64,000 bases of DNA, taken from contig NC_135257.1 of the NCBI RefSeq assembly GCF_964204865.1, forward strand, positions 18,352,001-18,416,000, given 5' to 3'. Positions 31,037 to 64,000 of the stretch are shown here, piece after piece; the first letter of the stretch is position 1; each line of letters begins with the position of its first letter. The DNA comes from Styela clava. Taxonomy: Eukaryota. A program made the translations under genes and the position numbers. The notes beneath the pieces are model-generated. The model did not search any database. It was not told the origin of the DNA and was given only the letters and a program-made list of their open reading frames with translations.

Positions 31037-31074
31037 TGATGGACGTTTTGATATTGGACACGTCAGTGTACATA

Positions 31075-34900: not shown

Positions 34901-35469
34901 TATGATCGGTCACTTTCCCACACATTTTTAAATATGCCCGTATTATTCATGTATTGAATATTTTATCAACAGAAAAATCATAACATATCCGTTGAAAAAG
35001 TCGGCTTTTCAACGAGTGGCGTTATGTCGACGATTGTCTCAGAAACCGTACCGCATGTATTACGAGGCGAAGGATATATATTTGTTACAATTACTTGACT
35101 TCTAGATATATTTTTTTCGAATCGAATCTCGAATCAAAAATCTTCGAATAGAATCTTTCCGAATCTGAATCCGTTAAGCTTTTGTTTCATCGAATGCATG
35201 GGTTTGCCTAAAGTCACAAAAATCTAGAAGAAATAAACTTGACAATGAAATATCAACACACAAACGTGGCAAAGATGGCAAAGTTTTTTCAGTGAATGAG
35301 CCACACATATATTCCCATCACGATAAAAAATATGTAGGCCATAGACATCACCAATATCTGCATTGATGAAAAACTGAGGTTACAATTTATCTGCGAGCCT
35401 TACAATACTGGATTATTATTGTGTAGATTTGCGCTTTCATACACATGCAGTAATTGTATCAGGACTGAG

Positions 35470-40710: not shown

Positions 40711-43700
40711 ATGTTACGCAGTAACGTACTTTTTGTGTTGTTTATGAGATTTATCTGCTCCACAGCAGAAGGTAAGTGTTGCATCTTATAATTTAACTAA
40801 AGCGCATTTATAATTTGTAAGTTTTTCTGACAATTTATAAGTATATTCAAAAATTGTCATAAGATTTTTATTAGATAAACATATTTAAATATAAACTGGC
40901 GAGCCAGGTAAGTGTAACGTTTTAAGTTACATTTTATTAACAATATCTAGAGTGTAACAAATGCAAAAAATAGAAAACAATAAAAATCGTGCCAAATTCA
41001 AATTTAATCACAATCTCAACAAATTCCTTGGCAGCATCAGGAGGGCCAGATTGAATTTCCCAACGTGCGCCCATGTCAGAACTAGAGTCATTTATTGGAC
41101 ACAAAATGCACATATAGATTGTTTTGTTATTATGTTGTTGTTGGTATTTTTCTTCTTTCTGTTGTGAAAAACTCGTTTAATACAAACGAGTTTAATACAA
41201 AAACCAATTGCTTCTACTAAAGTACTTCTGTCATAGTCAGCACTAATCACACGATTCCTGGATAAAAATAGAAATAATTCAATTTTATCTTTCCATGTAT
41301 TTGTACTTATTCGTTTTTTTTTATTTTCTCGTAAATTTCGAATCAATTACTGTAATCAAGATAGCCGATAACTTTTTGTTCTGAATTGAAATGTCGAATA
41401 TTCCTATTATTATGTAGGCCGACGCGATGTTTCAGGAAAGCCAGCTTTTTTAAATTTGAAACACGAATTACGCAATGGTTTTTGACCCGGAACTTGCACA
41501 TATAACATAATCAATTCACGAAGACCAACTAGGGCGTTATCAGAGAAATTGATTGTAGCATTGAAATGAACGTATTTTTATTTGCAGAAAACCAGCACAT
41601 CTGTCGCGAAAAGGGCGGATTCATTTATGATCGGAGATGTTTTTGGGTCATAATTGATCTCACTTTGGAATTCACAAATGCACAGGGAGAAGCGAAGTGC
41701 AATGAATTTGATACTTCACCGGCCAACATATACGATATACAGCACTTTAACCAACTTTTAAGTTATGGACGTGAAAATAGACCCGGGGATACCCTAATAG
41801 TGCATCTAGGAATGAAATACGATCCAAGTGTAAGAAATATTAATCTTTTCTCCTTCATTTGAAAATAGCGATCTGGAACTCTATAAATGACATTTTGTTT
41901 TTCTATATAGATGAGTATTGACATATTTATATGATTATGCAAACGAAAAGTGATATAGAAAAAATTTATTCGTTTTGAAGGGAACAAAATGGATTCAACA
42001 TTTATAATGTTATATAACAGAATATTTTAATCATAATGATTCCGCATGCAGATTTACGTAAGGAGAAAATAATGGTACAGGCAATTCTTTGGTAAAAATA
42101 CATGAAAACAGAAGTTTATTGTCATAGAATAATAAATATCATTTTCATAATAGAATAAAGTGTTGCAAAATCACGATGGGTCGATCTCATACTTGCCGGA
42201 TTCGGTGTGGTCGATCGCGCCAGCAGAACAAGAAATATACACCGACGTAGCGATGCGTATTGCGAATCCTCCAGTGGACCCTGATGAAGGCCTTGGGATA
42301 GTTAGCTCCATATGGACATGTGAGGGTGTTATATGCGAAACTGAACGTAAGTTGTTGACATTTATGTTACATGAATCAAACAAATGAAAACAAAATTGAT
42401 TAATTGAAATTGTAAAAAAATCGTTCTTGCAGTTTAAGTTTGCGCTTGTGATATTCGTGCCCTTTTTATTTGCTTATGGTTTTTACATTTATGCAATCGT
42501 CAGCCTTACAATTAAAAGTGCGCTCACATTATTATGCTTTGGCTCAACTTTCAAATATATGTAATGAATAAATGAACGAAGATTCTATTAATTTAGGTCA
42601 ATATTTCGTTAAAAAGCAAGCTTGAAGCTTCATGCATATTAAACTAAACTTTACAAAATCTACCAATAGATTGTGGTTCCCTAATGGGTAATTTTGCGAA
42701 AAAAATTACAATTTCTTTAATTATTGGACCAATCATTTATGAATATTAAGTACTCAAAAATGCAACTGTCGCTTGGAGAACTGTTATCTCTAATATTTTG
42801 GAAATTTTGTCTGGCTCACGTAAAAAGTTCCATGGGGAATTTATAATGTTCGAGTCTAAATAATCGATCTTTGCACTCAACTGTATTAGTGCGTGTGCCT
42901 TTCTGTTCATGTTGTGTGTGAACAAAGTACCAAGGTTTCACCGGCATATTCTATTGAATTGTGCAATACAATACTATAGTAATCAAGTAATATATAACGA
43001 TTTCTTTCTGTTACTATACCTTGGACACAATTATTCAATCTGTCCAATCGCATTTAATACTGATTCTCTTCCGTTTACAGAACTCAGTTGCACTCCTCTT
43101 CAAATAAACATGGAAACCCAAACGCGTACCTGTCCCGAAGACTCGCTTAGTTGCACGTAAGTATGAGAATGAGAATGTTAAAAAGTCGTGTCAGTGACAA
43201 ATGTTATGAGGGACATGGACATTGCTTAAGGAGTAATTATAAGTAACGAGATAAAGATCTAAAGATCGATAAGTAACAAACAAACAAACGAGAATATCGG
43301 TCGGAGACCGAAGACTTATCGATCGAAAGTCAGGGGATCCCCCAAAACAGATCTCGCGGCGTGTATCCTTCGCTCTGTCTCAATAGCGTGGAAAATTTCT
43401 CGAAGGACACTTGCGCATCGCGACGACGTCAAAGTTACAAGAGGGATATGGACAATGCTTAAAGATTATTCACGAGATACAATCTAGCGGTGTGTATTCT
43501 TCGCTCTGACTCACTAGCGTGAAAACTTGCGCATCGCACACACACGCACACCCAACGCGAATCAAAAATCTCTCGCTTTGCAAAAATCGTTCTCTCGATT
43601 TGCAAGAATCCAGATCTTTTCATCACTAATTAATTAACGAGAATATCGGTCAGAGACCCAAGACTTATCGATTCAAAGTTAGGGGATTTCCAAAACAGCG

Positions 43701-46700
43701 CTCTTACTCCATAGTGACACCTTGTGCCCATCACTAATTAAATAATACCTCGCTAATTATACAACATAATTCATCCGAAATCAATAGGCTTCTGGTCCGA
43801 GATTTGATGAATGCACATGCAAAATCTGAAGCAGATTCAATCTCGCTTTCGTGAGATATCGCGTGCCTCTAACAGACAGACAGACAAACAGACAAATACC
43901 TATCAACATAATTACCGATTAAAATCGATAAGTAATAACTCGATAATTATACAACATAATTCATCCAAAATCAATAGGCTTCTGGTCCGAGATATGATGA
44001 ATGCACTTGCAAATTCTGGAGCAGATTCAATCTCGCTTTCGTGAGATATCGCGTGCCTCTAACAGACAGATGTTATGAATTATTTATTCACGAATCTGAG
44101 TAATACAAAGTCTGGAATCTAGTTTAAAAATTGAGGCCATGTATAGGTACCTTAATTATATTGGTCTGTACAGAATGCGTAATTAATCAATTGAATTCGC
44201 AAATATTCATAAATATCCATCAAAGTCCATTCAAAATATACTAGGTAAGAAGACTCATGATTCGGTTTATACGCTGCATGTATAAGTTTGCAAAATATTG
44301 GATTAAAACTTTACTTATATATATTTCCTTTCTTCCAGTATATCTTGCAAACCTGGTTTTGTCTTTGACGACGAAAGCAGCGTCATTACACTGACGTGTC
44401 AAGATAATCTTGACTGGGATGGAGAAGTGCCAACTTGTAAACGTATGTAATTTACACATCCTTTACACAACTTGATGTAAAGTCGGCGAACAACCATAAT
44501 ATACTACATATTGGTACACACACTTTTTTTTAACTATAAAGTGACTTATCTGTGGTGTGATATCTCACTTCTCTATTACTTTACTCAGAAAAGTATTTTG
44601 CAACAGTCCAACTGACACAATTTTTTTCCATAAATTTTCACTTATGATAAAGAAGATATTACTATGTTCTTTTTCTCAGTTGCTGTGTGCCCAGAGCTCA
44701 GTTTCGATGGACAGCCAGGACTTATGCATTGTACTGGGAATGAATATCAGGATGAATGCAAGTGAGTGGAGTTTCCCGCCAACTATCTTTAAAATTCTAA
44801 TTAACCAGCTGATATAGAATAATTTTTAACAATAATTTTTTTTCAGCTTCGTCTGTGAGTCTCACAAACAACTCAAAGGACCAAGAAAAATAATCTGCAA
44901 TGACGACAGGACATGGTCAGGAATACAACCAACCTGTGAAGGTGAGAATGTAAAGTGTTGATTGGAAGATTTGAAACATTGCTAATTTTTTATGTTTGTT
45001 CATTTTTTACCAATGAACAGTCGAAAGCCACCGCGTAGTTATTAGGGAAATTGAGAGACTTTCAAACTGAATATCGTGAACGTATTTTGTTGAAATCGTT
45101 TGGGGCAAATTTTCCTTTTTTTTAAGTTATGAACTATGAACATTTTTAGTGTGTTACATTAATGCTATGTCATAGTGACCGTTCAAAGTTGTAACACTTG
45201 TTGGACTTTTTTACGTTCACATCATATTTCGTTAATTATTCATTTGTATTTCAGACGTTATTTGCGAACCAATAGATTTTCCGGCGGAACAAGGAACAAT
45301 GGATTGCACGGATGGATACAACTATGCAAGCTACTGCAGGTGTGTTGATTGAATATTTTATCTGAATGATGCTTCTACTGTCTTATACACATGTTTTATT
45401 GATGATTTGATAACGCGTATTAGTTATAACCGGTTGACAAACAAGCCGTTATCGCTTGTTATATTTCATTTTAACCTTGTATGTGACCTCGTACAAACAT
45501 GAAAGCATTACATGTCAATTGTAATCGCGACCTACGATCTATGTTATAAGTTCAAATCTTTGCCTGAGGCAAATCAGATCAAATGTTCAACAAAGCACCA
45601 TCTAATGCCTTTCTTCAACTTGATAAAATATATTCAGGAATGTGAAATAGCAATAATTTAAACCGCATTGCATTACCTCGAAAAAAAAGTAAGATTCTAA
45701 AGAAAACAATCAATCAATCTAATACGTTACATATAGATGCTGGCTGTGACGAATGCACGGCTTCAAAGTGTAATATGACGTCATGTTTTTCGTAGAATGA
45801 CTTAGAACCTTTGCACTAAGACGAGATGTTAATGTCCATCTCATACTTTATACCTATGGTAATGCTTATGCAAATTCTTTATTTGAATTGATTTAAAAAA
45901 AAAATCTTATAAAAACATTAGCAAAATAACAACATTTACTTTTTTAATAGTTTCTACTGCAAATCTGGATTGCAAAGATGGGGAGCAAAGAAAGTAATTT
46001 GTCTTAGGACAGGAGAATGGTCGGAAGAACCACCTACTTGCAAAGGTAAATTTCTTCAATTATTGATATTATAATTCTCAAACAATTTAAAGTCAGATCA
46101 ATTTTGAAATTAACTCATGGTTTAAACTGAAGCCCGTTAAGAAATGCTATTAGAACTTATCAGTATTTTAAACAAGTAGGTAATGAGTCGCTCACGAATG
46201 TTTAACTACCTGTCCGGATCAGGAAACAGACCTGTGAGCGACCGGAACTGTAAATTGAAAACTCTAGATAGATTAACTGGAGAAAACTCTAGATAGATTA
46301 TCTGGATTATATGGTAGTTGTGTCGAGTCATTGTTTTGAACAAAAATTTTAAATATTAAATAAATAATGTTTCACCACTGAAGCATGGCACCATGATATG
46401 ATTATAACATACAATACCAAGATTTATGGTTCAACTTTTTTTTCAGAATATGATCCTAAATGTCCTGATGCCCACAAACACACTTCATGTCCTGACAGCA
46501 ACTGTGCAGTTAATGCTGATTGCGATGACGACAAGAAGCTTTGTTGTCCTACAAAATGTGGAACTTCTATTTGTTGGGATTTACCGAAACGAACAATTTC
46601 TAGAGGTGAGAATATTTCCAAATGCGTTCTCTTGAAAGTTCAAATTTGTAATAGAACCATTTGAAAATAACTTTGTGTTTATTTATGTTTTAATGCAACA

Positions 46701-48518
46701 TCCAATTATCGGAGCGGGGAGAGGGGCGGGCTAGTAGTATGTTTAACCTTAATCCTACGATCTAGCATAGCGTTTCGTAGTGGATATCTCAATATGCCTT
46801 GTGTGGTCGTTGAGGGCTTGTATGGGATTTCCATATGTTAAACTTAACTTTACGATCTAGCTACGTGTGTGTGTGTGTGTGTAGGGAGAGTTAATGAGAG
46901 CGTATCTCCATATCAAAAAAACCTTTTACGGTACAGCTTTGTGTGTGTATTTGGGGTGGGGGGTGATATCTTCTTATGATAAAACTTATCCTTGTAATTC
47001 ATTCTTCTTCGGCAATATTCGCACGATAAATCTAACGATGTAGCCGTTTGTGTGTATGTTGGTGCAGGGGGGGGGGGGGGGGGGGTAGCTTTGTGGGTGG
47101 GGTCTTCATATTATCCCATTTTTTCTTAAAATTCATATCAGTGGCAACTTATTTCACAAAGGTGATATCTCAATATGAATATTTTTGTATTTGTTAAATA
47201 ATTTTATTTACTAAGCGAGTTCTCAGATTCAAACAAATGATCTCATTTCATTTTTAATATAATTTCATTGAGTCGTGATAATAAACTTAGTAAAATTGTA
47301 AAGTTAGCTAAAATTTTATTACAGAAGCGCTTCTATGGATAGTACTTGGTGGATTAGGCAGAAAGCAATGCCCTACAAACTGCTTGAGAAACGCCTGTGG
47401 GACTGCACGATGTCCAGCAAATCTCAATGCACAGTGTAGAACATCATGCAATGGTTGCCGAGCTCACTTTTACGATTTTAATCAAGAGGTTACCGAAAAT
47501 TGTAAGTTTATACTTAATATTTATAATATGATTAAAACCCGATTTTCACGGTGTTACAGAACAGCGTTATAACCTGAAACTTCTGGTTGCGCATGGCTCT
47601 GAACTTAGTAGAATATAGTATGCAAATTAGAAAGCTATAGTGTCTGCGGAAACTCTTGATATTTTCTATTACTCATAGCTAACTTGGTTCCAAGTATGTA
47701 GTACAAAATATGTGAGATAGAAATCTATAATCTTCGTGTGCTTTATTTTGTGTTTTTAGATTTCCTATTCCTCACAAACTTTTTAAGAATTCCAAGACCA
47801 TGTCGGATTTTTTAAATACGACTCTTGAAAGTTCAAGACAATGTAATATTATTTGAATACGATTTCCCGTATTGTTAAATATTGAACATAATAAAAAAAA
47901 GTATTTTATTGATATTATTTAACCTCGATTTTGTTTATTTAATCCAGGTCAATGTCCACGTGGTTATGTCGTGCCAAACTGTAATCAACAGCAATGTGCA
48001 AACTACAGATGCATTACAAACGGCCACCATATATCTTACTACCATGCCAGTCAATACTACAACCCCAACATACTATGTCGTATGAGCAGCTGTGGTGGAT
48101 GTTTTCCCCAATTCTATGATAGACGTGGACGAAGAATCAATTGCAGACAAATATTGCAATATGTATCAAATCCAGGAATTCCAGGTAATAATAATGTGGC
48201 AGGTTTAAACAAAATCAAATGATATATAAATGATTGCTTGAGTTTCGTATTTGAATATCCATTTTGAATAAACAATATCGAATCTTTAAATTATCCTATA
48301 TCAAACCTATCAAAGCATCTGAAATACATGAATAAATAAACCTTTAGATGACGTCCAGAATCTTTCATTATTTTTGATATTGCAGAAGCGTTGTATTAAA
48401 CAACTCATTTAAAATAGCACCTGTGGAAAGGTTTATAATTTTGATGTCTGAAAAAAACATTTTAATATAATTTTACTTTATCACACTTTCAGTGGCAAAT
48501 GTACCAATTGCCGGATGA
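40711..48518 (+). CDS. Secreted C-type lectin - 3xCCP - WAP - Cys-rich mosaic protein, copy A, 13 exons, 543 aa: 40711-40771, 41588-41829, 42154-42346, 43081-43156, 44339-44442, 44680-44761, 44847-44941, 45255-45339, 45951-46045, 46447-46605, 47325-47501, 47948-48184, 48493-48518
   Basis: All introns are GT-AG and the 1632 nt frame stays open. Signal peptide MLRSNVLFVLFMRFICSTAE; CTLD (C..GFIYDRRCFWV..C..ANIYD..HLGM..W..GVICE); three 6-Cys CCPs ending W...PTC; 8-Cys WAP (CP..C..C...DC....LCC...CG...C); two C..CxGC...FYD repeats; AATAAA near 48814. The last exon is the least certain. Confidence 0.85.
43210..44069. mobile_element. Tandem/concatenated HINE-like units in lectin intron 4 (duplicate at ~62143-63002)
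   Basis: Repeated AACGAGAATATCGGTC.GAGACC.AAGACTTATCGAT and repeated ..GCACATGCAAA..TCGTGAGATATCGCGTG..CAGACAGA blocks; same family as 28593-28840. Confidence 0.7.
46700..47110 (+). repeat. Degenerate G/GT-rich minisatellite with a 19-nt poly-G (47067-47085)
   Basis: Recurrent AAC..T..TACGAT.TAGC..GTGTGTG..GGG units. Confidence 0.6.
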
Positions 48519-49440
48519 GTACTGCAGACTATTGAAGGCAGATTTCAACACAACAACATCATATTAATCTCAAACAGAAATTACCTGATTTAAGCCTGTT
48601 ATCCGTGTTTACAAAATTTATGGAAGAGGACTTGGAGCATAATTCAAACTTATATTAGCTGATTTATATAAATGCTCATCTCCCAAGCTATAGCTTCAAT
48701 TTTCACATCCCCAATAAGGCCCAATGTCATGAACTTTTTGTCCATGCCATTCCTCCGTGGAATAGATTTTAACAGACAAAGGTCTCAATAGGCATATTTG
48801 AAGTGTTCACTTCAATAAAATTTTTCAATGATTGGGATTTTTTTATCATTTTCTTAATTTGTTTCTTTCACGATAATTGTATATATCAGTGTGTTGACAA
48901 CTACCAATGAGAATAAATGTATATCCAGTATCACTTGAGTCTAAATTCAGTCATAAGATAGGCGTTAGGGGAAATATGTGTTTTCAAGCTTGGAACCGGA
49001 TGCACAACATTAGGAATGTGATTGGATTGACGGTTTATCTTGCTCTGCGTAACAATCTAAGAAGAAAGATACCAATGGTGCTTGCGATTTTGCCGCTCAT
49101 TTCGGGGATCGTCCTACACCAAGGGTGGGCAACCCACTGAGAGGGTAACAGGATATCAATAATATAAATATTTAGGTTGCATCGTCAGGTTGAGGTCTGG
49201 AATAGCATTTGCAAATATTTTTGAGATACGTGAACTACACTTGTTAGTCCAACGGGTACTCCCGAAGTATGTGAACAAAGATGGCGGACACCGGAAAGTA
49301 GTGCGTACCAGGTTAGGGTTATGCCAGGTACAAACACTACGAAGGTCATTTGTCTAGTACCAGAACTCGTAATAGAACTAAAATAAGAAAAATTGAAATA
49401 AAATTATGGCCTAACCCGAACCTGGTACACATATCACGTT

Positions 49441-49687
49441 CCTCAGATAGTCTTAGAAAGCAGGGTAACAATCCTCAATCCAGCTTCAGTAGACAATCAA
49501 ATATTTTAACCAAAACCTCTGCAGGAAAATATGTCCATTCACTTTGGACTCGTTTTACATGTTTATGGCATAATTGTGTTTCTCCAGGCTTCGAATGTGA
49601 AACATTGTAGCTCAAGTTCTTTCTGTTTTTATTTAGTGGTGGTGTTTCATTGTTGTTTTCGTCCAGCTCAATCTTTGTTTTATTCAT
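49441..49687 (-). pseudogene. Truncated duplicate of the FBXL6 5' end
   Basis: MNKTKIELDENNNE..QSEWTYFPAEVLVKIF aligns to 28540-28294. There is an in-frame TGA where the intact gene has ACA, and homology ends inside the F-box at a MITE. Confidence 0.9.
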
Positions 49688-50791
49688 GGCTGTTGTGGTA
49701 TGACTGTATGATGATTAAGAAAAATAAAACTTAACAACCCGTAAAATAAGTTAGGGCAGGATTTATATATTTATCCCAGGGGGGAGGAAAGCCGATAAAT
49801 ATTGCAATTTACCAAAGAAATTTATTTTACAGTGGCATTCGACTCGAGAACTCTGGTCATGTGGCGGCTGACGCAAATTGTTTGATTGATTATAAATTAT
49901 TATCGATACAAGCATGGTGTGTTTTAACTCATATATCAGTATAGAGTCTATACTATGGAGTCTATAATATAGACTATGTATCTTTAGAGCAGTTTTCCTC
50001 AAACTCTTTTAGCCGTCTCTCCATTTGGAAAATTTCACAAACCTCACGCCAAACCATTTTGCTACAAAAAAAGCTTTTGTGATGGACATGGTGCTTTGAT
50101 TTACGATGGCGCTGTTAGAGAGTTGGTCTCAAAACGTCATTGCTCAGATTTTTGGCATAAAACGCATTGGAGAACAACTTCACTATTCATTGTTGTGTGT
50201 ACAAAGCCATACTTCCAAAAACTCCCTTTTCCGCTCATTTCGCAATACCTGGTAAAGTCAAACTAAATTTTAAGATAAACTAAAGGCGATAGACGTAAGC
50301 TTTCTTGCGCTTCAATGCACTTTATGCCTAAATGTTTACATACCACACGTAAAATTTCAATCAGTTGTTTACTTCATCACTATTGTCTATCGAAAGATTG
50401 AGCTATGCAAAAATCGAAGTATACGCCCACAGGTACATCTTGTTGGATTGGCTCAACACTTTTTGTCATTCCCAATCCCCACTGACTACGTCATCTGCAA
50501 ATTACATCACTGCGAAGTCGCAGTGACCTAATACGGCCCTCCATTCCATACGGAAGGTCGCGCAGACAATCATCCGGAATCGAGCAAGCTATTTTTCCAG
50601 TTTTTTTTTTGTCGTAACGATACCGACAAAAGAGAGATCGCTAGCGTTGATAAGTTTCTAACAAAGTGACTATAACACAAGTGAGGACAACCATTGGTAA
50701 CGTTATAAGCGCTTGTGTGACGTCACACCCGCCATTTTGGGTCCAAAGTTATATCGCTGGATAGATAGCTAAGTTATGTGCAGAGCGTAGG

Positions 50792-51251
50792 TAGGGTTGC
50801 CAACCGTCCTTTATTTCAAAGGACAATCCTTTAATTAAGCTTTTCGGTCCTTGTCATTTTTAGCTAATTGTCCTTTATTCTTTCCAACGTCGTTTGGCCC
50901 GATAGTTATAGCGAAAATATATACTACTACGGGTATAGTACTGTGTTTAATATTGTTCCGTTTTTCAAAAATTGCCTCCATTCATGTATTTGCAAGCTTT
51001 CAAATATTTTTTTTAATTTCGCTTTGGTCCGGCTCAAATAGCCAAAGAAATAACAATTTTATTAACATTGTTTGGGTCAATGTTAAATAAACATTAAATG
51101 AAAAACGCGTGAAGATTGTTTTATTATACCTTTTTAGCTTTTATATAATTTTTATTTCATTGTTTTATATTGTTCTTTCCTGCAAGTTACAAAATAAATG
51201 ATGACGGTAATCTATGTCCTTTATTGAAACTTTTTTTAGTTGGCAACTCTA
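50792..51251. mobile_element. hAT MITE nested in the P element
   Basis: TIR TAGGGTTGCCAAC / GTTGGCAACTCTA, GTCCTTTATT repeats, TSD ..CGTAGG on both sides. Confidence 0.75.
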
Positions 51252-51959
51252 GACGTAGGACTGAACTTGCCTAGCACTTCTGATAATTTCCCTACGTGTG
51301 TCACATGACATCCCGTGATTATGTGCAGGAAAATTACTGAACCTTACGGTTTAGGATGGTTTTTACAACCACTGGTTTACGACTTCCTTAACCATCAAGT
51401 CCATGCGCCTGGAAATTATGACCGATCAACAAATCCGAAAGAGGATTGGGGAACTAACCAAATAAATTTTCAAATTCATTGAATTTATTTTTGTGGGTGG
51501 AAGTTTGTTATAAAAGATGGATTAAATCAAATAATAAAAACAAAAAAAGAGGATTTTAGGTTGATAAGTTTTGCAAGTGTATAAATATTATACACATAAC
51601 AGTATGAAAAAAAATTTTTTTTTTTTTTTAATTTGATTGGGTGGAAATAAAAATAAATTTGATAGTAAGTGCTCAGAACAAGCATTGGAACGAGAATTTA
51701 GCAGCACGCCAAGCAAAGCAAAACAATATGAAATTGATCTTACAGCGGTACTAATTATATATGAATTAATATTACAGATAAACTATTTAATAAATTTTGA
51801 CAGGATTCTATCAATAAACTACAATTATTAAACATTGGTATCCTTTCGTTCAATGTGTGACGCGTAAAGTTTGATATAAAAATTGTCAAATTAGTTTATC
51901 TATTTTATAATTGCACAGTGGAAGTTATATTTATCCCACATTTTACAGTACCACATGAA

Positions 51960-52310
51960 TATATATATATATGTGAATAAATTAAGGAGTTCCTGCATGT
52001 GTGCTCAGAACAAGTACGTAGATGGCAATTCAAATATCATAGTGAATTAAAAATATATGTGAATAAATTATGGAGTTACAGCATGTGTGCTCACAACAAG
52101 TACAAACATGGCAATTCCTTTATCACCGTGTATTGAATGATTGATTACACAGTATTACAAGAAAATATATGTGAATAGAATATGGAGTTCTACCATGTGT
52201 GCCCTGAACAAGTACAAAGATGGCAATTCATTTATCATGGTCAATTAAATGATTCATTATACATTACTACATGAAAATATATGCGAATAAATAGTGGGGT
52301 TCCTGCATGA
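51960..52310 (+). repeat. Tandem repeat, ~3.5 units of ~85-112 bp, downstream of the P transposase remnant
   Basis: ATATATGTGAATA...GGAGTT...CATGTGTGC...AACAAGTAC...ATGGCAATTC repeated. Confidence 0.8.
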
Positions 52311-54464
52311 ATGTAATAATCTGGAGTGTATAATATATTATCTATTTAACTTGAGCTCTTGCTGCAGTTCTACTAGCATACTGTTTCTCAATAATTTTAT
52401 TTGTCACTTCTTTTGCGTGAATATTTAACCTTAGAGTGAGGAAACGTTTCAAAATTTTAAAAGCGACATTGTGGCAAGATGGAAATTATATTTCAAGCAG
52501 TCAACTTTATCTATCAGAAAAGTAACTGGCGAACATAGAATGCAAGCGCATCTTTGCAGATTCCACAGTCTTGTTTTTTCACTTCTTTGAGCAAAGCCCA
52601 ACGTGTTAAATAATACAAAGCATTCGCTTCACATGTGTCGAAAAAGCCAATGCAGCTCCAAGCAACACCACTCCATTGCACTGGATTCGTAGCTTGTTGC
52701 TTTTTTAGAGTCGAATTGCTGTTTTCTAAATTTGTTTTGATGAATTCGAGCGAATGGGGTATATCATCGTTCTCGTAGTTTGTTGAGGTCGGAGTGCTCA
52801 TAAATTGTGAGACGGAAATAGGTTTGACAGCCACACGAAATTGCGTAGGTTTGCAATGAATTATTAATTGAAATACGATTTAAATTTCATCATTACTTGC
52901 GAAAATAAATTTTCCGAGGCATCTTGCGTTAGGCCTTCCAGCCATGAGAAGAATAACTTCACCATTTAACCGCATAATACCTGCTTTAAAACGTATGCCT
53001 TAGGTTTATGACGTTTCGCACTTGCGAGGAAAAGCGATAAGTGTTTTTCATTACGAACGCAGAGCTACTACGTTGCAACACGTAATTGCAAAACGTCCCT
53101 GCGTAACAAAGTAATTAAGGAACGTCGCTGTTTAACTCAAGTTGGCGCAGCGGACATATGGAGAATTGGAGAACATTAATTAAAATAGCTTATACAATTT
53201 TACTGGTACACGATAAATTCAATCTAATTATACCACTCGCTATCTTTATTATATTATATTATTATACCAAAGCTATCTTTAACCTTTACAAATGTGTCGA
53301 TATTATAATAGGTTAAAACAAGAAAAAATCGAAGTTTTTTTTATTTAATTGAAAATCAATTCAAAAAAATTTCACGCTTTCACAAAATTCCACAATTTTG
53401 CCGATTTTTGTACGATAATTGCGACATTTTATCTTCATCGCATAGTTATTCTCTTAGATTGTCTCTCAAACAATATAAAACTTGTCTAAATATAATGTAA
53501 GGTTCCTGAGATAGAAGGTTTCAAAGTTGCATAGCTCACACGGGATAATAAGATAACTATCGCAACTTTCGCGAAACCGCACAATACCAGTATTGTTCCA
53601 CTAGGAAAATAGCAAAAGAAAAATGCTAAACTTATAGGAATAAAATATAAAACAGTAACAAATCTCCAAACAAATTAACAAACAAAACCTGATCAGCAGA
53701 CTGACTTTGTGTATATGTTTTCTGGTGGACAAAACAAATAAACTCTCATTCTCTCCATCTAAAACAGACTGATGCTGGGCGGTTCACGAGATTCGTAGGA
53801 CCCAAAAGGGCGTCCGATATGCATCATTGCACACGGTGTCTCCACTTGGTTTATAGTCACTTTGGTTCCTAATAGTCGGCACAGATGCCATAATTTAGAA
53901 AGCTCTATGACGCGATTGTGCCGTCGCAGTGACGTAATTTTTGGGTGACGTACTCAGGTGAGGGTTAGGAATATTATATGCAAAAATCATTACGCCCGAT
54001 AGAAATACTTTGGGGCGCGTACTTCAGGAGACCAAAAAAAAAACATTCACTGTGTAGTAAAGAAAACACAGTGATTACAAACGATTTGGCTTGCATAACA
54101 TTTCCAAATTAATTACCAATACTTTCTGACAACCACCAGGTTTAAAATACAATTTACAAAATGAAGAAGTGCAAATAAGTGTATGTACATTATCAGCGTA
54201 AATCGAAAGAAGTTAATTTTCAACAGGTAATAAAACTAAAGTCGCAAATGACGTTTGGAATTTGGTAGATATTTCCCCGAGCATCGAGTTCCTTGTTTAA
54301 ATCTGTAACAATTACACTTTTTAGTTGTGTTTCCAAAAAAATAGTTGTGAATCAAATATCTTACTTGACATTGTGTCTTCTGAGGATCATTAGTTTAGTC
54401 ACAATAATCAAAAATTCATACCACAAATGCTGCAATTGACTAGCTTATAATTAGCTATCAGAAG

Positions 54465-55437
54465 GCGAAGGTGAGGCACGTTGGGACATGGGGCACAGTG
54501 AAAAATCAGCTCTCACACTAATACTATATTCGTAATCCGGTTCGCGGTTTAATGTTTCAATCCGCCCTTCGGTGAGTTACAACGTCCCCGCAAACGGACA
54601 GCGGACGGGTAAAGCGACGCAAGCTATGAGGTGAAATTGGTTTTGGGGGGTTGAAACTAAAATTTCACCGTTCCAGTTTTTTCTTTTTTCTAACTTAGCC
54701 TTTTCAACGTGACAAACCACCGTCTGATATATTTCAGCTATAGTCCACTGTGAAATATTTATAACGTTGTCGAGTGGATGTGCCTTCCGAATTCCGCCGT
54801 GGGATGATCTGAAGATATTTGTTGATCATGGGGAACAATGGACGGGGTTCAGTGGGACATGCCCTACATGGCACAATTCGACAGTGTTTGATACAACAAG
54901 TGTTAGAGACCTAGAGATGCGTTATAATTTTATGTAACATTATGGTATCTTTCGACTCATGGTTCAATATGAAATATATTCGAGAATCAAAAATATTTCC
55001 AGATTAGATTCGGATTAGAAAATAATGTAATTTGTAAGCGAATTTTTTGGTGAAATATCTGAAATATTTCGGTTGAACATTGATTTTAAAAATCTTAAAT
55101 CTTCAAATTTGAGGTCTCCCTGTTCTTTAGACGATTGTGCTGATTGATTGCTTATTTTTAAGGGCATACTTCGTTGAATTTTAACAGAATGACCCATTGT
55201 GCCCCAGGGTCTGTCCGAATGTGCCCCATAAGTGGGGTACAGTAAAACACTTGATAAACGTTTTTCAAAGCATTTTGGTGGTAAGATGTGTGTCGCAAGG
55301 GAATTTCTTAGTCGCCGAATAAAAACTACATTTACCCCTCTCTGCATTAATCCCGCAGAGTCATATGAATGTGCAGAATAAACGACTCAAAATATGAAAA
55401 AGAAAAAAAGTGTCCCAACCTTCCCCACTATCCCCTA
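54465..55437. mobile_element. Degenerate DNA-transposon derivative (pogo/Tc1-like ends)
   Basis: GTTGGGACA..GGGGCAC on the left versus TGTCCCAACCTTCCCCACTATCCCCTA on the right; internal GGGACA/TGCCCC motifs. Confidence 0.45.
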
Positions 55438-55775
55438 CCTATAAGTGGCACGTAGTTTATTGTTTTGAATTAAATCGATAATGTGGAACATGGGAGCCAG
55501 TTTGTAAGCGCCAACTCGTCAAAACACTCAAAATCATCGTTTTTAAGGGGTCAAACTTGGAGAAAAGTCCATTGCATTTTGCTGATTGTCTCGTGATTGT
55601 TTCGTCAGTGTGACGTGTTATTCCAGTGGCAGACAGCTTTATTCCAGTGTTTATCTTCCCTAAATCAGAAATTCCCCTCGACATATGTTAGAAGTTACTT
55701 CGTTCAGTAAATATTCCAATTCACGTTTAAACTTAATCACGAAGAATGAATCATCGTCACAGGACCTTTAAAATC

Positions 55776-57366
55776 TAGAACAGTACCTGTAATACCGTCT
55801 CCGGTACCCTTATGCCGCGAGCCGAAGCCCTGGAAAACGCCTAGAAAGTGAGTTTCGTAGCGCACATCAGGTAACTAACTGAAAATGATTTTAAAATGTT
55901 CCTTAAAAATTAGGTAACAAATATTGCCTTGTTCCCACTTCCAAAAGTTGCACTTTTTACGGAAAAGACGTTTTTACTACAAGAAATATGTGCTACGATC
56001 TGTCCTATATTCTCTACATTTCCACCAATGAACAATGACTTCTTACTGACGTAACAATTGAATCGAATCAGCTGTTTGCGAGCGGATGAATCTTAGTTAT
56101 TACTGCTCGATCTTGCGTTGAGTTGGGCAGCCTTTACATAACCCTGTTTAGTTATTATTAGTTAAGTTATGCTTAGACTTTGTTAAAAAGTATAAGTAAG
56201 TTACTAAACACTTGTACATCCTTACCACGGATATGGGCGTGAGACGAGGCCTTGAAAAACGCCTAGAAAATGAGTTTCGTAGCGCACATCTGGTAACTAA
56301 TTAAATTCTTTAGTTTTGAATGAGAATGAACATACTGAACGCATTACAGCTTGTTCTACAATCCTGATGCGAAATTGAATATAGGGTTCCCGGGAATTCA
56401 ATAATCATAGGTTTACAACGACGCATCATAAGAACTATGCAATTCAAGATACCTACAGCACACTAACACAACGTCTGTAACGTCTTGCCTGACCAAAATC
56501 AGACTTTCTCAGACAATCATAATTTATTAGGTAGATTACAAAAAATATGGCATACATGTAACCAACAACAAAAAATATTTTAATTGTGTGACAGGATTCG
56601 CGAAGGACCTCGAAAGGTCTTCAAGCATGGACACCAACAACGCTGATTCAGATTAGCGAATAAATTTTATGTAATACCCATAAGCAGTTTACAACAAGAA
56701 CAGCATAAGAAGTTGCATTGATTTTTTAGTAGCTATCAAACGTTTTTATTTTTAGGCAATGAAGTCACAAATTAACAACGTGAGCACGAAAACACAAATA
56801 AATCAGTTATTTCTCACTTAGAATTTCACAGGAAAAGTCAAGAAAATAAATGAATATACATTCTTCATATCCTTTCCATACAGTGAACAAACAATTTCCT
56901 CAGCTTTATTTATTAATGCCTCGTTAACCTCAAAAAATCTTCGTATTTGAGAAAAAAATGAATTGAAAAACTCAATGAAGTCTGCAACATCAGTTTGATG
57001 GGCAGTTCCAATTGCAGAAAAGCGAGAGAGTATTTCATTATGAATAGCCCATCTAAGCTGTTTGCAACTGTTGTGATTCTCATATACCTTTACGCTTCAA
57101 GACTTCTTGTTCGATCCATTTTATAGCACTGATAGCAGCAGGAATTAGAGCCTGTGTTAGATTGAATTGGTGGAACATTGCCGTTTCATTTTGAAGTACA
57201 GTATCTAAAATGAAGAAGAAAATCATATTTGGAATAGCATGAGTGTAAAAATACCACTAAATACTGACTAATACATAATGCATTTTATCTGATGTACTCA
57301 ATAAGCGTGTACATGCTCATTGCATGTACTACAGTCCTGCAGTGTTTGCATACCGGTACTAGACTA
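55776..57366 (-). mobile_element. Probable Academ (AcademX-type) remnant, unit-B-specific
   Basis: TAG...CTA termini with imperfect TIR (TAGAACAGTACCTGTA vs TAGTCTAGTACCGGTA), flanks AATC/TATC, peptide remnant EVNEALINKAEEIVCSLYGK at ~56860-56932. Confidence 0.5.
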
Positions 57367-59603
57367 TATCTACACTGAATTTCGATATATCACAATCTGA
57401 AAGCCCTATGGACTATATTTTAAAACATCAACTGTCTGTCTACAACTTGATTTCTCAAGCTTTTTCCATTGAATGCGTAGATTTGCCCAAAGTCACAAAA
57501 AAACAAGCCCAAATCTAGAAGAAAAAAACTTGACAATGAAATATTGACACACAAACATGCTAGATAGCGAAGATGGCAAAGTTTTTTCATTGAATGAGCC
57601 ACACATATATTCCCATCACGATAAAAAATATGTAGCCCATTTTCACAAAATGAAAACATTAAAATGAAAAAAGGGATTTTCTCAGTGTATGTGCCAATGC
57701 CCCAACACTATAAACAATTTGTAGGTCATATACATCACCAATACCTGCATTGATAAAATAGGCCCAAAAACTTTAGTCATATCTTTTTAAAAGCGTATAC
57801 TAGAGTGCTCTTCCGCGAGATGACGCTCATGAGCGAGTGACCAATATAAATTTACATATGCGATCTTGTGTCCAACAATTTTTAAAAAGCAACCTTGAAC
57901 TTGAGTGGTATTGCATATGGTAGAGGGTTAAGTACTAATTATAGGCAATTCATTTTAATTTGATCGTTTTATTGTTTTCCAAACAAAACAATACCACAAC
58001 CAGTTACCAGGAAATTCACAATTGTATTTACGGAATTTGCAAATTCAATTGGCGTAGTACACTTGAGGTCTTATTTACACGCCACAGCGACACTGACAAA
58101 TGCCTGTACATTTTATTTTCATTTACTATTTTACCACCCACACCACCACGCATGGTAGAGGAAATTTTTCACATAACGGTCCCCGGTCAACGTTCACCTT
58201 TGGCAATCTATCGGTTTACAATACTTTGATTGCTTGTTTGCATTTTATTTTATGTAAAGAAAACCATCCTATAGCTGGCAAGAAGTTTCATCATTTTATA
58301 TAAATATATTTACTTCAATTTGTCATATTCTGGTATTAATACACCCCGTCTATAATAAAATAGATAAAACAGCAAAATCAAAAGACTGCCAGTTGAGATT
58401 GTTTACTTCACGTTCAGACAGAGATTAGGCTGAATAGATTGACGTTTCATGACAAGCTGTGATAGATTCACGGGTTCGTGCACCGCAGCTGACAATAATG
58501 TTAAATTTAGCGTTTTAAAAGTTATGTATTTTATTTATTTGAAGCGTGTCATGTTAATGCGGCTTATATACGTTTACTTAACTGATGGACAACTCAACTC
58601 GACACAAAAGAGAACCTGTTCTTAAAATTTGAATTCAAAACTTTCGAATAATCTCTAACGTAAAATATGTTTTTCAAAAAAGAACAAAAAAATCTATTAG
58701 ATTGGATGTTTCTCAAAGCATCGATTTCCTCGTTTATGTCCGTAATCATAAGTAAAGAATTAAGCGATGACCTAACAATTCTAATTTTTGCAGCGGCTCA
58801 GATATTTCGTTCGCTCAGACAGATAACATGGTTGTAAAAATTGCCTCGTTATTGCGGTTTTGCGTGGTATTTTTTAGTTTTCAGATGTATTTTCAAAAAT
58901 TAGTTCAAATTAAATATTTTAATTAATTGCCATTATGTCTTCCGATGAACTTTAGTTTAGTCGCGAAAACCAGTCTCGCAAACGCTGCGCGAGACTAGGC
59001 TGGATTTAGCTATTTGTACCTGTAAGCTGGCGTAATAAAAAAAAATGGAATTGAACATGCAAACCAGTTTGTAAACCCGCTCTCCAAAACACTCACAAAA
59101 TAAGTATAAAAAAGAATTGCAACAGTAAAGTATAAGAAGATTTTTCTCGGGTCAAAGGTCGGGTCGGGTCGGTCAAAGAAATGAATGAAAAATTTCCTCG
59201 ATATCCAACTATCCGCTCATGCATGGTTATATAAACCCGTGTAAATTGTATCTAAGTGAATATTTGAATTACCTGTAATGGTTAAGCAGCTTAAAAGGTT
59301 TCGAAAGAAATTACCAGAAATAATTAAAAAGAACTGGTTAAAACGAAGGAAGTATTTGACATATTTAAAATAAAATTCAGGAGAAACCTGTTATGACCTT
59401 AGTAAAGGTAGTACGTACCTTAGTAGTACGTAATATAAATAAATAATGAATTCCGATTGTACGGAGACATCACGCGGACATGAATTTAGATATAATCTCA
59501 TTGGTACAAAGTGCCGCCGGGTAAGTTTGCGGGAGAAAAAATAGTAAAACAAGGCGTTGGTCAAAAATATCATTATTTTCTTGCTGTAATTCCGCACCAC
59601 ACC

Positions 59604-62600
59604 ATGTTACGCAGTAACGTACTTTTTGTGTTGTTTCTGGGATTTATCTGCTCCACAGCAGAAGGTAAGTGTTGCATCTTATAATTTAACTAAAGCGCAT
59701 TTATAATTTGTAAGTTTTTCTGACAATTTATAAGTATATTCGAAAAAATGGCATAAGATTTTTATTAGATAAACATATTTAAATATAAACTGGCGAGCAA
59801 TGTAAGTGTAACGTATTAAGTTACATTTTATTAACAATATCTAGACTAGAGTGTTACAAAAGCAAAAAATAGAAAACAATAAAAATCGTGCTAAATTTAA
59901 ATTTAATCGCAATCTCAACTAATTCCTTGTGATATTTTTTGGTGAAATCATCAAAATATGGTTTAAGTTGGGCTCGGCAGCATCAGAAGGGCCAGATTGA
60001 ATTTCCCAACGTGGGCCCATGTCAAAACCAGAGTCATTTATTGGACACGAAATGCACATATTGATTGTTTTGTTATTATGTTGTTGTTGGTATTTTCTTC
60101 TTTCTGTTGTGAAAAACTCGTTTTGTGCATTAAATACAAGAACCAATTGCTTCTACTAAAATACTTCTGTCATAATTACCACTAATCACACGATTCCTGG
60201 ATAAAAATAGAAATAATTCAATTTTATCTTTCCATGTATTTGTACTATTTCGGTTTTTTTTATTTTCTCGTAAATTTCAAATCAATTACTGTAATCCAGA
60301 TAGCCGATAACTTTTTGTTCTGAATTGAAATGTCGAATATTCCTATTAATATGTAGGCCGACGCGATGTTTCAGGAAAGCCAGCTTTGCAACACGAATTA
60401 CGCAATGGTTTTTAACCCGGAACTTGCACATATAACATAATCAATTCACGAAGACCAACTAGGGCGTTATCAGAGAAATTGATTGTAGCATTGAAATGAA
60501 TGTATTTTTATTTGCAGAAAACCAGCACATCTGTCGCGAAAAAGGCGGATTCATTTATGATCGGAGATGTTTTTGGGTCATAATTGATCTCACTTCAGGA
60601 TTCACAAATGCACAGGGAGAAGCGAAGTGCAATGAATTTGATACTTCACTGGCCAACATATACGATATACAGCACTTTAACCAACTTTTAAGTTATGGAC
60701 GTGAAAATAGACCCGGGGATACCCTAATAGTGCATCTAGGAATGAAATACGATCCAAGTGTAAGAAATATTAATCTTTTCTCCTTCATTTGAAAATAGCG
60801 ATCTGGAACTCTATAAATGACATTTTGTTTTTCTATATAGATGAGTATTGGCATATTTATATGATTATGCAAACGAAAAGTGATATAGAAAAAATTTATT
60901 CGTTTTGAAGGGAACAAAATGGATTCAACATTTATAATGTTATATAACAGAATATTTTAATCATAATGATTCCGCATGCAGATTTACGTAAGGTGAAAAT
61001 AATGGTACAGGCAATGCTTTGGTAAAAATACATGAAAACAGAAGTTTATTGTCATAGAATAAAAAATGTCATTTTCATAATAGAATAAAGTGTTGCAAAA
61101 TAACGATGGGTCGATCTCATACTTGCCGGATTCGGTGTGGTCGAACGCGCCAGAAGAACATGAAATATACACCGACGTAGCGATGCGTATTGCGAATCCT
61201 CCATTGGACCCTGATGAAGGCCTTGGGATAGTTAGCTCCATATGGAAATATGAGGGTGTTATATGCGAAACTAAACGTAAGTTGTTGACATTTATGTTAC
61301 ATGAATCAAACAAATGAAAACAAAATTGATTAATTGCAATTGTAAAAAAATCGTTATTGCAGTTTAAGTTTGCTCTTGTGATATTCGTGCCCTTTTTATT
61401 TGCTTATGGTTTTTACATTCATGCAATCGTCAGCCTTACAATTAAAAGCGCGCTCACGTTATTATGCTTTGGCTCAACTTTCAAATATATGTAATGAATA
61501 AATGAACGAAGATTCTATTAATTTAGGTCAATATTTCGTTAAAAAGCAAGCTTGAAGCTTCATGCATATTGAACTAAACTTTACAAAATCTACCAATAGA
61601 TTGTGGTTCTGAATGGATAATTTTGCGAAAAAAATTACAATTTCTTCAATTTTTGGACAAATCATTTATGAATATTAAGTACTCAAAAATGCAACTGTCG
61701 CTTGGAGAACTGTTATCTCTAATATTTTGGAAATTTTGTCTGGCTCACGTAAAAAGTTCCATGGGGAATATATAATGTTCGAGTCTGAATATTCGATCTT
61801 TGCATTCAACTGTATTAGTGCGTGTGCCTTTCTGTTCATGTTGTGTGTGAACAAAGTACCAAGGTTTCACCGGCATATTCTATTGAATTGTGCAATACAA
61901 TACTATAGTAATCAAGTAATATATAACGATTTCTTTCTGTTACTATACCTTGGACACAATTATTCAATCTGTCCAATCGCATTTAATACTGATTCTCTTC
62001 CGTTTACAGAACTCAGTTGCACTCCTCTTCAAATAAACATGGAAACCCAAACGCGTACCTGTCCCGAAGACTCGCTTAGTTGCACGTAAGTATGAGAATG
62101 ATCCAATTTGTTAAAAAGTCGTGTCAGTGACAAATGTTATGAGGGACATGGACATTGCTTAAGGAGTAATTATAAGTAACGAGATAAAGATCTAAAGATC
62201 GATAAGTAACAAACAAACAAACGAGAATATCGGTCGGAGACCGAAGACTTATCGATCGAAAGTCAGGGGATCCCCCAAAACAGATCTCGCGGCGTGTATC
62301 CTTCGCTCTGTCTCAATAGCGTGGAAAATTTCTCGAAGGACACTTGCGCATCGCGACGACGTCAAAGTTACAAGAGGGATATGGACAATGCTTAAAGATT
62401 ATTCACGAGATACAATCTAGCGGTGTGTATTCTTCGCTCTGACTCACTAGCGTGAAAACTTGCGCATCGCACACACACGCACACCCAACGCGAATCAAAA
62501 ATCTCTCGCTTTGCAAAAATCGTTCTCTCGATTTGCAAGAATCCAGATCTTTTCATCACTAATTAATTAACGAGAATATCGGTCAGAGACCCAAGACTTA

Positions 62601-63874: not shown

Positions 63875-64000
63875 GTGAGAATGTAAAGTGTTGATTGGAA
63901 GATTTGAAACATTGCTAATTTTTTATGTTTGTTCATTTTTTACCAATGAACAGTCGAAAGCCACCGCGTAGTTATTAGGGAAATTGAGAGACTTTCAAAC

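What the first reader, a model, noticed from the sequence alone, without database searches (positions are those of the whole stretch)
41588..61276. Lectin-domain exons of the two paralogs differ almost only by amino-acid replacements
Counted by eye. Exon 3 (193 nt) has 8 differences, all non-synonymous (H>N, I>N, A>E, Q>H, V>L, T>K, C>Y, E>K). Exon 2 has 3 replaced codons (L>S, E>G, P>L) and 1 synonymous change. CCP exons 4-7 (357 nt) have a single change (E>G). Exon 3 looks more divergent than the preceding intron (about 5 differences in 324 nt). Changes cluster in WSIAPAEQE > WSNAPEEHE, roughly where the CTLD long-loop binding site lies. Inference: diversifying selection on ligand specificity, as in pathogen-recognition, allorecognition or gamete-recognition loci.
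Basis: partly seen in the sequence, partly recalled or inferred. Interest (0 to 1): 0.85.

Follow-up and report, generated by a model that had tools for sequence, protein, structure and literature searches.

The report
Sea-squirt lectin gene twins, partly homogenised
Two neighbouring copies of a secreted lectin-like gene of the sea squirt Styela clava do differ almost only by amino-acid changes in the lectin part. The pair alone cannot separate selection from neutral drift, and the near-identical rest of the gene reflects a recent copy-over event, although the wider family has two hypervariable lectin loops.

Summary
The counts are exact. Exon 3 has 8 differences, all replacements. Exon 2 has 3 replaced codons plus synonymous change. 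CCP exons 4-7 have one change.

The pair does not show dN/dS above 1. Exon 3 gives one-sided p=0.13, and the lectin exons together give omega 1.46, p=0.47.

The lectin-versus-CCP contrast is regional, not exon-specific. Everything 5' of about 42,880 (in intron 3) is about 3.4% diverged, non-coding DNA included. Everything 3' is about 0.4% diverged, introns included. That is a gene-conversion or unequal-crossover tract.

Replacements have accumulated at the non-coding rate (19 seen, 17 expected), so strong purifying selection is excluded (omega at or below 0.5, p=0.001).

The genes are LOC144425723 and LOC120328110 of Styela clava. They sit in a birth-and-death tandem array whose next four copies are broken.

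Across ten copies, two loops of exon 3 are hypervariable. Codon site models favour omega above 1 there, but synonymous divergence is also raised in the loops, and the test weakens when only intact genes are used. The A/B replacements fall preferentially at these variable positions.

Verdict: a real, fast-evolving lectin-like family of a known kind. Diversifying selection is plausible for the family and unproven for this pair. No read-level check was possible.

The parts
39924..48976 (+). Duplicated block, copy A, holding gene A (LOC144425723, product XP_077971390.1 = P0001, 543 aa)
   Evidence: Self-BLAST and MAFFT alignment to 58830-67912. Protein identity.
58830..64000 (+). Duplicated block, copy B, holding gene B (LOC120328110, P0010-P0012). 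It runs on to about 67912 beyond the window end.
40711..40771 (+). Gene A exon 1 (signal peptide). B equivalent is 59604-59664. Differences: M12L and R13G.
   Evidence: Matches the N-terminus of P0001.
41588..41829 (+). Gene A exon 2, N-terminal half of the lectin-like domain. B equivalent is 60518-60759. Five nucleotide differences.
   Evidence: Matches the Lectin_C protein P0002 at E=4e-34.
42154..42346 (+). Gene A exon 3, C-terminal half of the lectin-like domain. B equivalent is 61084-61276. Eight differences, all replacements.
42211..42240 (+). Hypervariable loop HV1 (residues 121-130, alignment sites 20-29), starting at the EPN-motif-equivalent position. In B it is 61141-61170. Holds I122N, A125E and Q127H.
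42301..42324 (+). Hypervariable loop HV2 (residues 151-158, alignment sites 50-58), just before the conserved GVICE strand. In B it is 61231-61254. Holds T156K and C157Y.
42880..43175 (.). Edge of the homogenised tract, in intron 3. Divergence is about 3.4% to the left and about 0.4% to the right. A 4-bp indel plus 3 substitutions lie at 43171-43175. In B the edge is 61805-62108.
43081..44941 (+). Gene A exons 4-7 (43081-43156, 44339-44442, 44680-44761, 44847-44941), encoding CCP1 and CCP2, 357 nt. In B: 62010-62085, 63272-63375, 63613-63694, 63780-63874. One change, E203G at 44374.
   Evidence: Pfam Sushi hits.
45255..48518 (+). Gene A exons 8-13 (45255-45339, 45951-46045, 46447-46605, 47325-47501, 47948-48185, 48493-48518). 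They encode CCP3, an eight-Cys WAP-like module and two Cys-rich modules.
   Evidence: Pfam finds Sushi only and no WAP.

Best explanation
A and B are tandem paralogues of a Styela clava-specific gene. It encodes a secreted mosaic protein: signal peptide, atypical C-type-lectin-like domain, three CCP domains and Cys-rich modules. The genes sit in a birth-and-death array.

A recent gene conversion or unequal crossover homogenised everything 3' of a breakpoint in intron 3. The 5' 3 kb (upstream DNA, signal-peptide exon and both lectin exons) stayed at an older divergence of about 3.4%. That explains why the CCP exons look frozen.

Inside the older zone, the exons have diverged as fast as the surrounding non-coding DNA. 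Protein-level constraint on the lectin domain is therefore weak or absent. Replacements are concentrated in the patches that are hypervariable across the whole family, chiefly two loops around the canonical ligand-binding face.

The pair is statistically indistinguishable from neutral drift. At family level, diversifying selection on the two loops is the more likely driver, but it is not proven.

Shown here: the counts, the two zones, the array and the hypervariable loops. Inferred: conversion as the cause of the zones, selection on the loops, and a recognition function.
For: Two-zone divergence includes introns: 3.45% against 0.40%, p=1e-23.

Mosaic near-identity occurs elsewhere in the array. 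The 3' end of copy D is 99.4% identical to A 46616-49500, while its 5' part is about 75-80% identical.

Exonic and non-coding divergence are equal in both zones. There are 19 replacement changes against 17.0 expected at the non-coding rate, and omega at or below 0.5 is rejected at p=0.0013.

Family-level results:
- Exon 2 has omega 0.63 and exon 3 has omega 1.34.
- M2a against M1a gives 2dlnL=59.4 for exon 3 and 12.8 for exon 2. The largest null LRT in 14 simulations was 4.5.
- The loops fitted with their own tree length give omega=2.77, p=0.003.
- In the loops, positions 1 and 2 change more than position 3 in moderately diverged pairs.
- The A/B replaced sites are variable among the other copies (p=0.0065).
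- Among the four annotated full-length or near-full-length proteins compared (P0001, P0015, P0017, P0018), amino-acid identity rises from about 11-22% in the loops to about 90% in CCP3 and the eight-Cys (WAP-like) and last Cys-rich modules.
Against: The pair itself gives no significant excess of replacements.

Synonymous divergence in the loops is also raised (pS 0.52 against 0.17). Part of the site-model signal may therefore come from rate heterogeneity, loop misalignment with indels, or older coalescence of the loops.

With intact genes only, the loop test gives p=0.17.

The loops were delimited after seeing the data.

Recombination inflates site-model tests, and conversion is frequent here.

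B carries derived changes at family-invariant positions: P65L, a CpG transition, and E165K. That fits decay as well as it fits selection.

No expression or population data were available.
Confidence: 0.55

Rival explanations
1. Pure relaxed constraint. After duplication, one copy (probably B) or both are redundant and drift neutrally. The replacement-only pattern in exon 3 is sampling noise, and positive selection plays no part.
For: - Omega is not different from 1 in any partition of the pair.
- Replacements accumulate at exactly the non-coding rate.
- The four neighbouring copies C-F are all broken, with stops or missing exons. Decay is therefore the common fate in this array.
- B has derived changes at invariant positions, P65L at a CpG and E165K.
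- The framework of exon 3 has omega of about 1 across the family.
- Intact reading frames carry little weight. About 1.2 stops are expected among 23 changes, so P(0)=0.3.
Against: - Replacements are not spread evenly. They favour positions that vary among the other copies (p=0.0065).
- The loops show omega of about 2.8 at family level, which neutrality cannot produce.
- Non-coding changes are symmetric between A and B (32 against 25), and exonic ones are not clearly one-sided (3 against 6, with 6 ambiguous).
- Both genes are annotated as full-length and protein-coding.
Confidence: 0.3
2. The A/B differences themselves were driven by positive diversifying selection on ligand specificity, and purifying selection keeps the CCP exons constant.
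For: - Exon 3 has 8 replacements and no synonymous change.
- Five of the 8 lie in the two family hypervariable loops, and L47S and E48G lie in the exon-2 variable patch.
- Codon 108 has a different derived residue in each copy, with ancestral Y.
Against: - The pattern is not significant: p=0.13 for exon 3 and 0.47 for the domain.
- CCP constancy is explained by a tract that also includes the introns.
- Within that tract the exons are no more conserved than the introns: 8/1111 against 20/4982.
- The changes are clustered, so there are few independent events.
Confidence: 0.1
3. Artefact. The two copies are haplotypes wrongly placed in tandem, or the differences are assembly errors.
For: Gene A has a new locus number while B keeps an older one. 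That may mean an earlier assembly held only one copy; this is inference only.
Against: - About 10 kb of distinct sequence separates the copies. That spacer matches the region upstream of A only in patches of 81-91% identity.
- There are no N runs in the window.
- The array continues with further, more diverged copies.
- Differences occur in non-coding DNA at the same density as in exons.
Confidence: 0.05

Closest known systems
Fast-evolving C-type-lectin-like recognition families (rodent Ly49/KLR natural-killer receptors, snake-venom C-type lectin-like proteins, invertebrate CTL expansions); from general knowledge, not tested here
   Same: Tandem birth-and-death arrays. Variation is concentrated in the loops of the upper lobe of the C-type lectin fold. 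The canonical Ca2+/sugar motifs are lost. Elevated dN/dS is reported in the binding loops.
   Different: Here the domain heads a secreted CCP x3 plus Cys-rich stalk with no membrane anchor. The family was found only in Styela clava. The ligand and the expression pattern are unknown.
Selectins (NCBI names some members 'E-selectin-like'; Foldseek rank 2 is E-selectin 4c16)
   Same: An N-terminal C-type lectin-like domain followed by CCP repeats. The CCP exons are in phase 1.
   Different: There is no EGF domain, no transmembrane segment and no EPN or WND Ca2+/sugar motifs. The lectin domain itself does not reach the Pfam Lectin_C threshold. This is not a selectin.
Styela clava tandem C-type lectin protein P0002 (XP_039255940, 'macrophage mannose receptor 1-like')
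   Same: It is the closest relative of the lectin-like domain outside the array (E=4e-34). It shares the PANIY, YLGMKYD and GV(I/V)CE motifs. It is a bona fide Lectin_C protein (6e-30), with PDB relatives DEC-205 and mannose receptor.
   Different: It has five lectin domains in a row and no CCP or Cys-rich stalk.
Concerted evolution that spares the recognition part (for example KIR or MHC class I genes); from general knowledge
   Same: Constant parts are homogenised by conversion while the recognition part keeps older divergence. Mosaic identity tracts are seen.
   Different: Here the older zone also includes 1.7 kb of upstream DNA and intron 1. A single breakpoint explains it without invoking selection against conversion.
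Another hypervariable lectin-like cluster 4.7 Mb further along the same chromosome, noted by this scan (s1-812121)
   Same: Same species and the same theme: near-identical duplicated genes with sharply differing lectin loops.
   Different: It is a different locus and gene architecture. It was not examined here.

Membership tests
C-type lectin-like domain (Pfam PF00059 Lectin_C) | Significant match to the family profile | tested here: inconclusive
   P0001 and the exon halves give no Lectin_C hit. Exon 2 matches P0002 at E=4e-34. P0002 is Lectin_C at 6e-30 and hits solved C-type lectin domains. Homology is therefore transitive, not direct.
C-type lectin-like domain | Conserved cysteine framework (C1-C4 and C2-C3, plus the long-form N-terminal pair) | tested here: not met
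   The sequence has C26/C38 (long-form pair), C58 (C1) and C162 (C4). There is no cysteine at the C2 position (TDVAMRI). C157 of copy A is not conserved in the family, and copy B has Y there. The C2-C3 bridge is absent.
C-type lectin-like domain | Ca2+/sugar-binding motifs EPN or QPD, and WND | tested here: not met
   The aligned positions read IAPA in A and NAPE in B. No WND motif is present. It is lectin-like and probably not a Ca2+-dependent lectin.
C-type lectin-like domain | The alpha/beta fold with two helices and a long-loop region | tested here: inconclusive
   The AlphaFold2 model has low confidence (domain pLDDT about 50-64). The order of its secondary-structure elements fits the fold. 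Foldseek rank 2 is E-selectin lectin+EGF+SCR over 297 columns.
Sushi/CCP (PF00084) | Profile match and four-Cys/Trp pattern | tested here: met
   P0001 matches Sushi at E=6e-14 in three stretches. Exon 5 alone gives 7.6e-7. PDB hits include CR1, CR2, CD46 and DAF.
WAP four-disulfide core | Profile match | tested here: not met
   Pfam gives no WAP hit on exon 10 even at E up to 10. Only the eight-Cys pattern with a CC doublet is visible by eye.
Selectin | Lectin-EGF-CCPn-transmembrane architecture | tested here: not met
   P0001 has no EGF module and no transmembrane segment.
Gene pair under positive selection | dN/dS significantly above 1 between the two copies | tested here: not met
   Exon 3 gives p=0.13. 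Exons 2+3 give omega 1.46, p=0.47. The whole CDS gives omega 1.23, p=0.47.
Gene family with sites under diversifying selection | A site model with omega above 1 fits better than a nearly neutral model, robust to rate variation and recombination | tested here: inconclusive
   M2a against M1a gives 2dlnL=59.4 for ten copies and 29.7 for intact genes only. The loops fitted alone give omega 2.8, with p=0.003 for all copies and p=0.17 for intact genes. Synonymous divergence in the loops is also raised. No recombination-aware test was run.

The most novel reading that the evidence does not exclude
The array is a germline-encoded repertoire with a variable head on a constant stalk, in the closest invertebrate relatives of vertebrates. 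Gene conversion keeps the CCP/Cys-rich stalk uniform. Selection keeps two loops of the lectin-like head different between copies. Broken neighbouring copies still contribute exons, since annotated B isoforms use the terminal exons of copy C. Such a system could serve pathogen, self/non-self or gamete recognition.
Probability: 0.2. Interest if true: 0.65.

Novelty: new member of a known kind. Interest (0 to 1): 0.35.

Why it matters
Tunicates lack antibody-type adaptive immunity yet discriminate microbes, and in some species self from non-self. Expanded lectin families are candidate recognition repertoires. This locus is an uncharacterised, species-restricted secreted family with a clear split between a variable head and a constant stalk, and with active gene conversion.

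It also carries a methodological lesson. A contrast between replacement-rich and frozen exons in young paralogues can come from a conversion-tract edge rather than from different selection. About a dozen differences cannot separate positive selection from neutrality.

Tried and rejected
- Pfam on the exon halves gave nothing. The lectin assignment therefore had to go through the database protein P0001 and its relative P0002.
- A search for short transcript-derived fragments with the exon 3 peptide of B found no candidates.
- I looked for micro-conversion from another copy as the source of the clustered changes. No copy carries B's HV1 or HV2 states. Only the exon-2 patch (S-G) resembles copy G, and A's L47 resembles copies C and E. 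This is not demonstrable.
- I tried the younger pairs C/E and D/F as neutral controls. They have too few differences: D/F exon 3 has 2 changes and none in the loops, and exon 3 of E is frameshifted.
- Polarising the A/B changes with outgroup copies is ambiguous in the loops. It is 3 against 6 in exons and 32 against 25 in non-coding DNA, so there is no clear asymmetry, despite the longer B branch in the nucleotide tree.
- The AlphaFold2 model of P0001 from a 7-sequence alignment was too poor for three-dimensional mapping (pLDDT 46).
The constant exons of these copies could be compared only at protein level.
- The 49-58.8 kb spacer shows no convincing gene.
- Literature searches found no paper on this family.
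Full report
WHAT IS THERE

The window is Styela clava chromosome piece C9:18,352,001-18,416,000. A self-comparison shows a direct duplication, 39924-45067 against 58830-64000, that runs off the window end. With 70 kb of downstream sequence added, it extends to 39924-48976 against 58830-67912.

- Copy A encodes LOC144425723 (XP_077971390.1, P0001, 543 aa).
- Copy B encodes LOC120328110 (P0010-P0012).

My splice-site reading of 13 exons reproduces P0001 exactly.

I searched the spliced model exon by exon, by reference. Where the whole protein was needed I used the database entry P0001 that one search returned. Exons were joined only inside scripts, from the session's files, to count codons.

THE OBSERVATION

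- Exon 3 (42154-42346) has 8 differences, all replacements.
- Exon 2 (41588-41829) has 5 nucleotide differences: three replaced codons, one synonymous codon (K29), and a synonymous step inside the L47S codon.
- Exons 4-7 (357 nt) have one change, E203G.
- Intron 2 has 5 differences in 324 nt.

Over the whole CDS there are 19 replacement and 4 synonymous changes.

IS IT MORE THAN CHANCE?

No. The Nei-Gojobori counts are:
- exon 3: Nd 8 over 150 sites and Sd 0 over 42 sites, one-sided p=0.13;
- exons 2+3: omega 1.46, p=0.47;
- whole CDS: omega 1.23, p=0.47.

Exon 3 (4.1%) exceeds intron 2 (1.5%) only at p=0.083. It does not differ from the rest of the local non-coding DNA (3.45%, p=0.54). Intron 2 is the odd one out (p=0.047).

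Differences are clustered in exons and non-coding DNA alike, so independent events are fewer than the counts suggest.

WHY THE CCP EXONS LOOK FROZEN

The A/B alignment has two zones.
- From 39924 to about 42880, non-coding divergence is 81/2348 = 3.45%.
- From there to 48976, it is 20/4982 = 0.40% (p=1e-23).

The edge lies in intron 3, with an indel and substitution cluster at 43171-43175. Exons 1-3 lie in the old zone (15/496 differences). Exons 4-13 lie in the young zone (8/1111). In each zone, exons are as diverged as introns.

The lectin-versus-CCP contrast is therefore a regional property. A gene conversion or unequal crossover with one end in intron 3 explains it best. The same mosaicism is seen elsewhere: the 3' end of copy D is 99.4% identical to A 46616-49500, while its 5' part is about 75-80% identical.

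WHAT THE PAIR DOES SHOW

Replacements have accumulated at the non-coding rate: 19 seen against 17.0 expected. Omega at or below 0.5 is rejected (p=0.0013), and omega at or below 0.7 is rejected at p=0.035. Strong purifying selection is absent. The intact reading frames say little (P of no stop = 0.3).

Polarising with other copies gives 32 A-derived and 25 B-derived non-coding changes. In exons it gives 3 A-derived, 6 B-derived and 6 ambiguous. B carries derived changes at two positions that are invariant or nearly so in the family: P65L, a CpG transition in the conserved PANIY motif, and E165K. Codon 108 is Y in most copies, H in A and N in B.

THE FAMILY

The genome holds a tandem array on C9 from 18.39 to 18.55 Mb, plus copies on C2. 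The four copies after B are all damaged.
- C has a stop in exon 9 and lacks exon 10.
- D has a stop in exon 4 and lacks exon 10.
- E has a frameshift or stop in exon 3.
- F lacks exon 2 and has a stop in exon 10.

This is birth-and-death evolution.

In protein databases of billions of sequences, the family appears only in Styela clava.

Pfam sees three Sushi/CCP domains in P0001 but no Lectin_C domain. Exon 2 nevertheless matches P0002 at E=4e-34. P0002 is a five-domain Lectin_C protein of the same species (6e-30) with solved relatives DEC-205 and mannose receptor. The domain is therefore a divergent C-type-lectin-like domain. It lacks the C2-C3 disulfide and the EPN/WND motifs.

The structure model is poor (pLDDT 46). 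Foldseek still ranks E-selectin lectin+EGF+SCR second.

FAMILY-LEVEL SELECTION TESTS

I aligned exon 2 from 9 copies and exon 3 from 10 copies and ran my own codon-model code.

Among the four annotated full-length or near-full-length proteins compared (P0001, P0015, P0017, P0018), amino-acid identity is about 22% in HV1 and about 11% in HV2. It is 61% in the rest of exon 3 and 65% in exon 2. It is 76%, 85% and 91% in CCP1, CCP2 and CCP3, and about 90% in the eight-Cys (WAP-like) module and the last Cys-rich module.

Codon-model results:
- Pairwise omega has a median of 0.46 in exon 2 and 1.24 in exon 3.
- The one-ratio model gives 0.63 for exon 2 (below 1, 2dlnL=6.7) and 1.34 for exon 3 (not above 1, 2dlnL=2.9).
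- M2a against M1a gives 2dlnL=59.4 for exon 3, with 36% of sites at omega 5.6. It gives 12.8 for exon 2.
- In 14 data sets simulated under M1a, the largest LRT was 4.5.

Sites with posterior above 0.9 form two blocks. HV1 is residues 121-130 and HV2 is residues 151-158. Six of the eight exon-3 A/B differences have posterior above 0.9, five of them within the blocks. L47S and E48G are in the exon-2 patch.

Independently of A and B, the A/B replaced sites are more variable among the other copies than unreplaced sites (p=0.0065).

CAVEATS ON THAT SIGNAL

- In the loops, synonymous differences are also about three times higher (pS 0.52 against 0.17). The loops carry indels. Site models with a fixed synonymous rate therefore overstate omega.
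- Fitting the loops alone with their own tree length still gives omega 2.77 (p=0.003). The framework gives 1.01. However, the loops were delimited after seeing the data.
- With the five intact genes only, the loop estimate is 2.9 but p=0.17.
- In favour of real selection rather than misalignment: in moderately diverged pairs, loop positions 1 and 2 differ more than position 3. For J-K the values are 0.31, 0.62 and 0.19. Randomly paired loop codons give 0.71-0.75 at all three positions.
- Conversion is frequent in the array and inflates such tests.

CONCLUSION

The other half, diversifying selection on binding loops, is plausible for the family and unproven for this pair. Neutral decay of a redundant copy remains a serious rival.

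Context: the Styela clava genome paper reports expanded complement and lectin recognition genes expressed at metamorphosis (PMC7540406). It does not describe this family.

This scan had already noted another hypervariable lectin-like cluster on the same chromosome (s1-812121) and the gene model of copy A (s1-815950).

NOT DONE

No read-level check of assembly, expression or polymorphism was made. Full loci of copies G, I and J could not be fetched.

Noticed in passing
beyond the window: C9:18,425,100-18,480,000 (copies C-F; loci L061-L067): The four array members after B are all damaged. C has a stop in exon 9 and no exon 10. D has a stop in exon 4 and no exon 10. E has a frameshift or stop in exon 3. 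F lacks exon 2 and has a stop in exon 10. The C-D and E-F units are themselves a duplication of about 31 kb at 97.3-99.4% identity.
   Followed up: partly
gene B (window 59604 onward) and copy C exons 11-12 (window-continued coordinates 80411-80593 and 81084-81326, in L062): The annotated isoforms X2 and X3 of LOC120328110 join B's 5' exons to the terminal Cys-rich exons of the broken downstream copy C, 13-14 kb away. This may be real read-through splicing or an annotation artefact.
   Followed up: partly
window 46616-49500 and copy D 3' end (window-continued coordinates 92268-95144): There is 99.4% identity over 2.9 kb between A and the otherwise 75-80% identical, broken copy D. This points to a second recent conversion or duplication tract in the array.
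   Followed up: no
window 41830-42153 (intron 2): Intron 2 is less diverged between A and B (1.5%) than the other non-coding DNA of the same zone (3.75%, p=0.047). No explanation was found.
   Followed up: no
window 42154-42346 and paralogues: Outside the two loops, exon 3 evolves with omega of about 1. Rates are nearly equal at the three codon positions across the family (0.24, 0.18, 0.22), and its synonymous divergence is lower than that of exon 2.
   Followed up: partly
window 43739-43880, 43929-44070 (and 62672-62813, 62862-63003; 28640-28841): A repeat of about 142 nt occurs twice in intron 4 of each copy (94-96% identity) and once upstream at 28.6 kb (about 82-86%). It is probably a small mobile element.
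   Followed up: no
window 28294-39380 and 49441-58174: Patches of 81-91% identity suggest an older duplication unit of about 20 kb (spacer plus lectin gene). Within it, the genes are far more alike than the spacers. No convincing gene was seen in the 49-58.8 kb spacer.
   Followed up: partly
window 40000-42880: A/B substitutions are clustered. 33% of non-coding and 47% of exonic differences lie within 3 nt of another, against 19% expected. This points to multi-nucleotide events or micro-conversion.
   Followed up: partly
The two C-terminal Cys-rich modules also match no family.
   Followed up: partly
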